This document shows, one piece after another, positions 19,064 to 19,503 of a stretch of DNA of 46,988 nt. The notes under the pieces were generated by a model. It had not been told where the DNA came from. It was given only the letters and a program-made list of their open reading frames with translations, and made no database searches. Every line of letters starts with the position of its first letter. Position 1 is the first letter of the stretch. The position numbers and the translations under genes are program-made. This stretch comes from Octopus sinensis. Lineage: Eukaryota. The DNA lies in contig NW_021834642.1 in the NCBI RefSeq assembly GCF_006345805.1, positions 1 to 46,988 of the forward strand, in the 5' to 3' direction.

Positions 19064-19065
<2 letters not shown>

Positions 19066-19503
19066 GTGTAAGTATAATAGTCCGGATATTATTGTTTGGG
19101 GCAAACAAGAAAAGACATGTACTGTCATAGAGGTCAATTGTCCTACTGATGTGAATATCCCTTTGAAAATCAAAGAGAAAGAAGATAACTATGGACAACT
19201 GCTTCGTATTCTATATCCAGATTACAAATTTACATTTATACCAGTAATTGGTGCACTTGATTTTGTGAGTTAATAATGCCTAATTGACAGTCTGGATAAA
19301 GTTGGATTTTCAGGAAAAGGATTCAAACAATTCAGTCACACATTACAAATACAATCTGTAAGTGAAACAGCATAAAATATGCAAGGCTTGTCTCAAGTTT
19401 AAAATGTGACATTGTCTTCGCTCTCTATATCCCAACGAGCTTTGTATCTTTGTTAGAAACCAGCTCCTTGTTCACAGGAAGAATGTAAATAAATAAAAAC
19501 GAG
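19064..19503 (+). mobile_element. 5'-truncated RLE-type non-LTR retrotransposon (R4/Dong/NeSL-like): endonuclease C-terminus and 3' UTR
   Basis: KYNSPDIIVWGKQEKTCTVIEVNCPTDVNIPLKIKEKEDNY...IPVIGAL fits the PD..(D/E)..K..Y restriction-like endonuclease; the ORF remnant ends ...KICKACLKFKM*. Confidence 0.8.

What the first reader, a model, noticed from the sequence alone, without database searches (positions are those of the whole stretch)
19064..19503. RLE-type LINE apparently targeting (CATA)n arrays
Seen: a PD-(D/E)xK-like endonuclease fragment begins directly after a ~200-bp (CATA)n array and ends in tacatacata. Related fragments at 29193-29927 have the same strand relationship to the repeat. 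Established: RLE-bearing non-LTR elements are often site-specific, e.g. R2/R4 in rDNA and Dong in (TAA)n. Inference: a (CATA)n/(TACA)n-specific family. Clade assignment is weak because no RT is present here.
Basis: partly seen in the sequence, partly recalled or inferred. Interest (0 to 1): 0.75.

Follow-up and report, generated by a model that had tools for sequence, protein, structure and literature searches.

The report
Octopus Dong LINE fragments in ACAT microsatellites
The flagged 440 bases are the dead, front-truncated tail end of a Dong-type jumping gene (a LINE with a restriction-like nuclease) sitting inside an (ACAT)n microsatellite; about ten related copies show the family inserts into that repeat, a new target for an element type already known from octopus.

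Summary
A (TACA)50 array (18865-19064) runs straight into a 3'-terminal LINE remnant, which ends at 19503 and is followed by tacatacata.

- **What the remnant is.** It encodes the last ~112 residues of an RT-CCHC-RLE protein, with three premature stops, followed by a 101-bp 3'UTR.
- **Clade.** Full-length relatives recovered from public assemblies fall in the R4/Dong clade. They score 320-384 bits to Dong, against 175 or less for R2, NeSL, Utopia, HERO and CRE, and the clade has 100% bootstrap. The modelled C-terminus matches the R2 endonuclease region.
- **Other copies in the window.** The second locus is two minus-strand copies at about 29193-29927. A fourth, old tail lies at about 2391-2848.
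- **Junctions.** Ten ACAT-family copies come from the window, O. vulgaris and other assemblies. Nine have ACAY repeats directly after the 3' end (background 1-4%). Six of seven visible 5' junctions abut ACAT or ACAY repeats (the seventh is degenerate), at different truncation points. All are in one orientation.
- **Relatives.** Related families carry (CTGA)n, (CTTA)n or the classical (TAA)n.

Dong-R4 LINEs are already known to be abundant in octopus. Only the tetranucleotide target appears undescribed. Interest is moderate.

The parts
18865..19063 (+). (TACA)50 / (ACAT)n microsatellite: upstream half of the insertion target
   Evidence: TRF period 4, 50.5 copies, 94% matches. The sequence upstream of the array (18720-18864) has no similarity to the element's tail.
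19064..19402 (+). Decayed C-terminal coding remnant of a Dong-clade LINE ORF: the RLE domain and C-terminal helices, equal to residues ~1021-1135 of P0155. Premature stops at 19271-19276 and 19373-19375; natural stop at 19400-19402.
   Evidence: Translation. tblastn with P0155: 48% identity, E 1e-19. Profile hits to RT-CCHC-RLE proteins.
19403..19503 (+). 3'UTR (101 bp) with the family's conserved block GTTAGAAACCAGCTCCTT at 19452-19469; end of the element
   Evidence: Tail alignment and nhmmer hit, E 1.8e-22.
19504..19513 (+). tacatacata: the ACAT repeat after the 3' end (rest of the target and/or the element's repeat tail)
   Evidence: Sequence; junction table.
29928..30027 (-). (ACAT)25 on the minus strand: 5' flank of the solo tail copy
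   Evidence: TRF 29925-30027, period 4, 25.8 copies; sequence.
29813..29927 (-). Solo 3' tail (~115 bp): an extremely 5'-truncated copy of the same subfamily as the next copy
   Evidence: 82% identical to 29193-29306; nhmmer E 2.1e-25.
29791..29812 (-). Short ACAY stretch (acatacacacatacatgtgtac) between the two copies: 3' flank of the solo tail and 5' flank of the next copy
   Evidence: Sequence and junction table.
29193..29790 (-). 5'-truncated Dong-clade copy. RLE fragment at 29564-29790. About 90 bp of the ORF end are deleted. The internal 3'UTR (ACAT)n is expanded (29321-29513). Terminal tail at 29193-29315.
   Evidence: Translation. tblastn with P0155, E 7e-14. 92% identity to O. vulgaris L002, which has the same internal repeat.
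29167..29192 (-). (ACAT)6.5 directly after the 3' end of the minus-strand copy
   Evidence: TRF 29167-29193; junction table.
2391..2848 (+). Old, diverged tail of the same kind, split by a SINE insertion (2488-2810, target duplication ctcttataaata). Degenerate ACAY on both sides.
   Evidence: nhmmer E 4.6e-05; sequence. This is the weakest part.

Best explanation
The finding is a dead, 5'-truncated copy of a non-LTR retrotransposon of the R4/Dong clade. It keeps the last ~112 codons (with three premature stops) and a 101-bp 3'UTR. The element has one ORF: an N-terminal three-helix domain, a reverse transcriptase, a CCHC knuckle and a restriction-like endonuclease (RLE). The copy lies inside an (ACAT)n microsatellite.

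The family inserts preferentially into (ACAT)n arrays, in one orientation, in the way classical Dong inserts into (TAA)n.

**Inferred mechanism**
1. The ORF protein binds its own RNA through the conserved 3'UTR.
2. [quoted passage not shown]
3. The RLE nicks the (ATGT)n strand.
4. The nicked end pairs with ACAU repeats carried at the RNA 3' end, probably by read-through into the array.
5. The nicked end primes reverse transcription (TPRT).
6. Frequent early termination gives 5'-truncated copies that are flanked by the repeat on both sides.

**Shown versus inferred**
- Shown: the identity of the peptide, the clade of its full-length relatives, the RLE fold, and the junction pattern and its orientation.
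- Inferred: the nick site, the pairing of RNA tail with target, and the role of the N-terminal domain.
For: **Identity**
- The peptide matches RT-CCHC-RLE proteins. The profile search gave 428 hits, and the long ones have RVT_1 plus zf-RVT plus the C-terminal domain. tblastn against P0155 gives E 1e-19.
- Hits include Octopus bimaculoides and O. vulgaris proteins.

**Clade**
- Full-length relatives score 320-384 bits to Dong of Bombyx and Aedes over ~600 aa. They score 220-280 bits to R4 and 175 or less to R2, NeSL, Utopia, HERO and CRE.
- In the NJ tree, R4 + Dong + queries have 100% bootstrap. Queries + Dong excluding R4 also have 100%.

**Fold**
- The AlphaFold model of the C-terminal 170 residues has pLDDT 85-98.
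- Its best PDB matches are the R2Tg, R2Pm and R2Bm proteins at probability 1.0, followed by PD-(D/E)xK cap-snatching nucleases.

**3' junctions**
- ACAY repeats directly follow the 3' end in el19, both 29-kb copies, the old tail, L001, L004, L012, L013 and L006.
- L006 is a full-length 1130-aa element from another assembly.
- L002 has only ACAT + AT.

**5' junctions**
- Junctions at different truncation points abut long arrays: (TACA)50 for el19, (ACAT)25 for the solo tail, (CCAT)n(CATA)3 for L002, (ACAT)n for L012 and (ATAC)65 for L013.
- The DNA upstream of the el19 array contains no element tail.

**Other support**
- Background for an ACAY 8-mer is 1-4%.
- All ten copies have the same orientation.
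- Related families show the same architecture with other repeats. (CTGA)n lies on both sides in L007. (CTTA)n follows the 3' end in L015. (TAA)n lies directly before the 5' end of the full-length L014.
- The literature states that R4/Dong elements insert into rDNA or microsatellites (PMC7998251).
Against: - No RT is present in the window. The clade of the window copies therefore rests on 43-49% identity of ~100 RLE residues to relatives that do carry an RT.
- Only about ten ACAT-family copies were seen. Several come from short contigs that end in the repeat. The species of the Logan and ENA contigs is unknown.
- No full-length octopus copy was seen, and no 5' junction of a full-length ACAT-family element.
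- No empty orthologous site was examined.
- In several copies the 3' repeat is short (10-27 bp), as a templated tail would be.
- L002 has almost no repeat after its 3' end.
- L011 (CTGA family) has 62 repeats at the 3' end and none at its 5' end.
- No consensus RNA structure was found in the 3'UTR.
- The Myb/SANT assignment of the N-terminal domain was not confirmed here.
Confidence: 0.8

Rival explanations
1. Tail, not target. The (ACAT)n is only the element's own 3' microsatellite tail, as in RTE, CR1 or I elements. The arrays are seeded and expanded from those tails. Insertion is not directed at pre-existing arrays, and the 5' arrays belong to neighbouring older copies.
For: - Every copy has the repeat directly after its 3' end, and it is often short at 10-27 bp.
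- One subfamily carries an internal ACAT repeat in its 3'UTR that has expanded in the window.
- L011 has the repeat only at the 3' end.
- LINE tails are known to generate microsatellites, and the octopus RTE has a microsatellite 3'UTR (PMC2887409, PMC9115989).
Against: - Copies truncated at different internal positions abut long arrays at their 5' ends (el19, solo tail, L002, L012, L013, L007).
- No element tail lies upstream of the el19 array.
- The full-length (TAA)n relative L014 has the repeat immediately before its 5' end.
- The two readings are not exclusive. In Dong the tail and the target are the same repeat.
Confidence: 0.14
2. Chance juxtaposition in an unusually microsatellite-rich genome.
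For: The window has 111 TRF rows. ACAT-type arrays cover about 2-3% of it.
Against: - 9 of 10 3' junctions and 6 of 7 5' junctions carry the repeat, against a 1-4% background.
- Orientation is constant in 10 of 10 copies.
- The same pattern appears in unrelated assemblies.
Confidence: 0.01
3. An RLE LINE of another clade (HERO, NeSL/Utopia or R2), as the first reader left open.
For: The window holds only the RLE part. HERO families with microsatellite specificity and the (TG)n-specific Togen are reported (PMC4640811).
Against: - All long proteins recovered with the RLE profile are Dong-like. They score 320-384 bits to Dong and 51-95 bits to HERO.
- The R4/Dong clade has 100% bootstrap.
Confidence: 0.03
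4. A fragment of a host gene encoding a PD-(D/E)xK nuclease, not a mobile element.
For: The short ORF has an ATG at 19064.
Against: - There are three premature stops.
- Multiple dispersed copies share a 3'UTR.
- Relatives carry an RT.
Confidence: 0.01

Closest known systems
Dong (Bombyx mori and mosquito Dong; R4/Dong clade of RLE LINEs)
   Same: - Single ORF with RT, CCHC and a C-terminal RLE, and no N-terminal zinc fingers.
- Best RT+linker match (30-35% identity over ~600 aa) and the same clade at 100% bootstrap.
- Inserts into a microsatellite, with the repeat on both sides.
   Different: The classical target is (TAA)n, reported for most insects, molluscs and cnidarians (PMC7998251). The octopus family and its nearer relatives sit in the tetranucleotide (ACAT)n instead. 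Sister families sit in (CTGA)n and (CTTA)n.
R4 (Ascaris and other nematodes)
   Same: Same clade and domain order. It is the second-best RT match at 220-280 bits.
   Different: R4 targets a site in 28S rDNA, not a microsatellite. The tree places the queries with Dong to the exclusion of R4.
Waldo (R1 clade, insects), from my own knowledge of Kojima & Fujiwara's target-specific LINE surveys; not checked here
   Same: Reported to insert into (ACAY)n repeats, which is the same kind of repeat seen at these junctions.
   Different: Waldo uses an apurinic-like endonuclease and belongs to a distant clade. This would be convergence on the target, not relatedness.
Togen ((TG)n-specific, fish) and microsatellite-specific HERO families (leech)
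   Same: RLE LINEs with microsatellite targets (PMC4640811).
   Different: They belong to different clades. HERO references score only 51-95 bits against the relatives found here.
Octopus 'Dong-R4' LINE families in published repeat libraries
   Same: Very probably the same families. Five Dong-R4 families with 1129 recent insertions are reported in O. vulgaris (PMC13282606). A full-length Dong is in the O. bimaculoides library (PMC9115989).
   Different: Those papers do not describe insertion sites or any microsatellite association. Their sequences could not be compared here.

Membership tests
R4/Dong clade of RLE LINEs | One ORF with reverse transcriptase followed by a CCHC motif and a C-terminal PD-(D/E)xK restriction-like endonuclease | tested here: met
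   - Relatives P0155, P0160, P0117, P0051 and P0008 have RVT_1 plus zf-RVT/CCHC plus the C-terminal domain.
- The C-terminal model matches R2 proteins at Foldseek probability 1.0.
- The window copies retain only the RLE part, with the PD, E and K residues present.
R4/Dong clade of RLE LINEs | RT phylogeny groups with R4 and Dong | tested here: met
   - Met for the full-length relatives: blastp 320-384 bits to Dong, and NJ bootstrap of 100% for the clade and for Dong + queries.
- For the window copies this is an inference, because no RT is present. Their RLE is 43-49% identical to the RLE of RT-bearing relatives.
R4/Dong clade of RLE LINEs | No N-terminal zinc fingers; a diverged Myb/SANT-like domain near the N-terminus (PMC7998251) | tested here: inconclusive
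   - The N-terminal W..W..HP motif is conserved between P0117 and the upstream-extended P0155/P0160 ORFs.
- It is modelled as a three-helix bundle with pLDDT about 90.
- Pfam and PDB sequence searches found nothing.
- The fold search lists Myb domains only at E of about 1.
R4/Dong clade of RLE LINEs | Site-specific insertion into rDNA or a microsatellite | tested here: met
   The repeat lies on both sides of copies truncated at different points, with constant orientation. The sample is small, at about ten copies.
Dong in the strict sense | Target is (TAA)n | tested here: not met
   Octopus copies and L006, L012 and L013 are flanked by (ACAT)n. Only the more distant relative L014 is preceded by (TAA)n.
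HERO clade | RT groups with HERO references | tested here: not met
   51-95 bits to HERO-1_SP, HERO-2_DR and HERO-1_PP, against 320 or more to Dong. HERO forms a separate clade at 100% bootstrap.
NeSL/Utopia clade | RT groups with NeSL or Utopia references | tested here: not met
   81-137 bits. These references form a separate clade at 100% bootstrap.
R2 clade | RT groups with R2; insertion in 28S rDNA; N-terminal zinc finger(s) | tested here: not met
   - 68-175 bits to R2Bm, R2Dr and R8Hm.
- PDB R2 proteins match only the RT, at E of 1e-28 or weaker.
- The flanks are microsatellite, not rDNA.
LINEs with microsatellite 3' tails only (e.g. RTE) | Repeat at the 3' end only, random 5' flanks, APE endonuclease | tested here: not met
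   Six of seven 5' junctions lie in ACAT or ACAY repeats (the seventh is degenerate), and the endonuclease is an RLE. L011 is the one copy that would fit a tail-only pattern.

The most novel reading that the evidence does not exclude
The Dong lineage has repeatedly switched its microsatellite target. (TAA)n would be the ancestral state. A tetranucleotide subgroup would use (ACAT)n, (CTGA)n and (CTTA)n in different families. [quoted passage not shown] In octopus these elements would both target tetranucleotide arrays and seed or expand them, contributing to the genome's very high microsatellite load.
Probability: 0.3. Interest if true: 0.6.

Novelty: new variant of a known kind. Interest (0 to 1): 0.42.

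Why it matters
- RLE LINEs are the natural models for site-specific, nick-primed insertion, and R2 is being developed for gene insertion.
- A set of closely related Dong families with different, simple repeat targets would be a compact natural experiment on how such elements change target. The families seen here use (TAA)n, (ACAT)n, (CTGA)n and (CTTA)n.
- For octopus genomics it links two known features: abundant, recently active Dong-R4 LINEs and an exceptional microsatellite content.
- It also warns that many 'simple repeat' loci carry LINE tails.
- It is an increment rather than a new principle. Microsatellite targeting is already the hallmark of Dong.

Tried and rejected
- **Pfam on the two window peptides** found nothing useful.
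- **The first word-indexed homology search** found a single 82-aa hit. Only the profile search without a word index reached RT-bearing relatives.
- **A PDB sequence search with the C-terminal profile** found no RLE. The fold comparison was needed.
- **Ends of the full-length contig L005** were uninformative, with no repeat at either end.
- **The N-terminal Myb/SANT domain was not confirmed.**
  - Pfam and PDB sequence searches were negative.
  - The second job gave a confident three-helix bundle. Its fold matches were not significant, with Myb domains at E of about 1.
- **Consensus RNA structure of seven 3'UTR tails:** none predicted. The conserved block GTTAGAAACC.G.TCCTT is a primary-sequence feature only.
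- **Literature searches for an ACAT-specific non-LTR element** found none.
- **No further RT-bearing or tail copies** were found in the window or in the 20-kb O. vulgaris locus.
- **Readings considered and rejected:** host gene fragment, chance juxtaposition, and HERO, NeSL or R2 membership.

Full report
**Observation**

The window is eukaryotic DNA very rich in microsatellites, with 111 TRF rows. It comes from an octopus. The peptide's closest named relatives are Octopus bimaculoides XP_014788340 and an O. vulgaris predicted protein on chromosome OX597824.

TRF gives a (TACA) array of 50.5 units at 18865-19064. From 19064 one frame reads MCKYNSPDIIVW...IEVNCPTDVNI...KIKEKEDNYGQL...IPVIGALDFVS, then two stops, 32 more codons, a third stop, 8 codons and the natural stop at 19400-19402. 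A 101-bp 3'UTR ends at 19503 and is followed by tacatacata.

Pfam does not recognise the fragment.

**What the peptide is**

A profile of the two window peptides plus one Logan hit was run against 1.84 billion representative proteins. It found 428 relatives. The long relatives (649-1492 aa) have RVT_1, then a CCHC 'zf-RVT' motif, then the matched domain at the extreme C-terminus.

Two full-length members were recovered from cluster listings with their DNA: P0155 (1135 aa) and P0160 (1130 aa). The finding aligns to residues 1021-1123 of P0155 at 48% identity, E 1e-19. The minus-strand fragment at 29588-29782 aligns to residues 1041-1105, E 7e-14.

An AlphaFold model of the C-terminal region is confident over the last ~170 residues (pLDDT 85-98). 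Its best PDB matches are the R2 retrotransposon proteins of zebra finch, turtle and silkworm at probability 1.0. PD-(D/E)xK cap-snatching nucleases follow. The 'PD-(D/E)xK-like endonuclease fragment' is therefore a genuine restriction-like endonuclease (RLE) of a non-LTR element.

**Clade**

I took RT+linker reference sequences for R2, R8, R4, Dong, CRE, HERO, NeSL and Utopia from the supplementary alignment of Mahbub et al. 2017 (PMC5678591).

| Reference | Score of the four full-length relatives |
|---|---|
| Dong (Bombyx, Aedes) | 320-384 bits, ~600 aa aligned, 30-35% identity |
| R4 | 220-280 bits |
| All other clades | 175 bits or less |

A neighbour-joining tree on 450 columns puts R4 + Dong + the queries together at 100% bootstrap. 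It puts the queries with Dong, excluding R4, also at 100%. HERO and NeSL/Utopia form separate clades at 100%.

The window copies have no RT. Their assignment rests on the RLE similarity to these relatives.

**Anatomy of the second locus**

On the minus strand, 29813-29927 is a solo 3' tail of about 115 bp. Its 5' side abuts (ACAT)25 (29925-30027).

A short ACAY stretch separates it from a second copy at 29193 to about 29790. That copy has the following parts:
- an RLE fragment (VQLWKFSCPANVNI...IGALGCVTHCLNTNLDKLGFTKPERRKLIR);
- a ~90-bp deletion of the ORF end;
- an internal (ACAT)n at 29321-29513;
- a terminal tail at 29193-29315, 82% identical to the solo tail, followed by (ACAT)6.5.

The O. 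vulgaris relative L002 is 92% identical to this copy. It shows that a short ACAT repeat inside the 3'UTR is a feature of this subfamily. The window copy has simply expanded it.

A tail profile also detects an older copy at 2391-2848. It is split by a SINE with a 12-bp target duplication.

**Junctions**

ACAY repeats directly follow the 3' end in nine copies:
- el19;
- both 29-kb copies;
- the old tail;
- L001 and L004 (Logan contigs);
- L012 (Logan; the contig begins and ends in ACAT);
- L013 (ENA long-read contig: a copy of residues 927-1134 lying between (ATAC)65 and (CATA)56);
- L006 (a full-length element ending ...tatttagaaacga followed by (ACAT)10 to the contig end).

L002 has only 'acat' plus AT repeats.

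5' junctions occur at different truncation points and abut (TACA)50, (ACAT)25, an ACAY stretch, (CCAT)n(CATA)3, (ACAT)n and (ATAC)65. The DNA upstream of the el19 array holds no element tail.

An ACAY 8-mer within 14 nt of a random position occurs at 1-4% per strand. Nine of ten 3' junctions and six of seven 5' junctions cannot be chance.

All ten copies carry ACAT, never ATGT, on the sense strand.

**Relatives with other repeats**

| Locus | Repeat and position |
|---|---|
| L007 (= L008 = L009) | (GACT/CACT)n and (CTGA/CCGA)n on both sides of a copy of residues 827-1134 |
| L011 | (CTGA)62 after the 3' end, none at its 5' end |
| L015 | 3' end followed by (CTTA)n |
| L014 (full-length, more distant) | 5' end directly preceded by (TAA)n, the classical Dong target |

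In the C-terminal domain the tetranucleotide-associated families share 32-54% identity with each other. They share 25-40% with the (TAA)n family.

**Mechanism**

The pattern has four features:
- the repeat lies on both sides;
- orientation is fixed;
- 5' truncation points vary;
- the 3'UTR is conserved and ends in the repeat.

This is what target-primed reverse transcription into a repeat array produces, as accepted for Dong in (TAA)n.

I infer four steps that are not shown. The RLE nicks the (ATGT)n strand. The RNA carries ACAU units at its end, probably by read-through into the array. Pairing of these with the nicked target sets the start of cDNA synthesis. The N-terminal domain contributes repeat recognition.

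That N-terminal domain shares a W..W..HP motif between distant relatives. It is modelled as a three-helix bundle. Schön et al. describe it as Myb/SANT-like in R4/Dong (PMC7998251). My own sequence and fold searches could not confirm that assignment.

No consensus RNA structure was found in the tails.

**Rival**

The main rival is that the repeat is only the element's tail, as in RTE elements, and that arrays grow from tails. Three observations favour it:
- the short 3' stretches;
- the internal 3'UTR repeat;
- L011.

The 5' junctions of truncated copies, and the (TAA)n before the full-length L014, argue against it as a sufficient explanation. Both processes probably operate together.

**What is known**

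- Dong-R4 LINEs are established components of cephalopod genomes (PMC8967140).
- O. vulgaris has five families with 1129 recent insertions (PMC13282606).
- The O. bimaculoides library holds a full-length Dong (PMC9115989).
- R4/Dong elements are described as inserting into rDNA or microsatellites, with (TAA)n as the Dong target in most insects, molluscs and cnidarians (PMC7998251).
- Microsatellite-specific HERO families and the (TG)n-specific Togen are also reported (PMC4640811).

I found no paper describing an (ACAT)n, (CTGA)n or (CTTA)n target for a Dong-clade element. Repbase and Dfam entries could not be consulted.

**Verdict**

- The clade is resolved as R4/Dong.
- The element type is known. 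The tetranucleotide target is a new variant.
- Limits: a small and heterogeneous sample of copies, no full-length octopus copy, and no empty-site comparison.

Noticed in passing
window 10900-15133 (minus strand): A separate, largely intact APE-type LINE. Its ORF1-like protein has a CCHC zinc knuckle (14744-15133). It also has an Exo_endo_phos endonuclease (13561-14046) and an RVT_1 reverse transcriptase (11859-13592). It is unrelated to the RLE element.
   Followed up: partly
window 19652-19882, 10766-10994, 26182-26406 (tandem pair 25999-26362); L002 17728-17960: Copies of one SINE-like repeat of about 230 bp, 88-89% identical to a copy in the O. vulgaris locus. One lies only 150 bp downstream of the finding.
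   Followed up: no
window 2488-2810: A tRNA-like SINE inserted into the old Dong tail. It has a clean 12-bp target-site duplication, ctcttataaata.
   Followed up: partly
L013 2040-2290: The 5' (ATAC)n array of this copy is interrupted several times by a 13-bp unit, aatgaatgtaaag, each followed by more CATA repeats. These may be extremely short 3'-end copies from repeated insertion into one array. This is not proven.
   Followed up: no
L007 9440-9560 and 11150-11260; L011 10854-11101; L015 2761-2818; L014 1-92: Related Dong-clade families in other, unidentified organisms are associated with different repeats: (CTGA)n, (CTTA)n and (TAA)n. This suggests family-specific microsatellite targets.
   Followed up: partly
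window 29540-29563: At the deletion in the minus-strand copy's ORF end, a short (GTAT)4 sits in the opposite orientation to all other repeats of the locus. Its origin is unexplained.
   Followed up: no
window 2839-3340: A 209-bp unit repeated 2.3 times at 90% identity (TRF score 810). It lies directly after the old tail copy and was not examined.
   Followed up: no
window, whole: Tetranucleotide arrays other than ACAT are frequent: (ATAG)n, (AGAT)n, (TAGA)n and (AGAC)n at 5124, 6280, 9971, 22420, 28892 and 41002. Whether other LINE families are tied to them was not checked.
   Followed up: no
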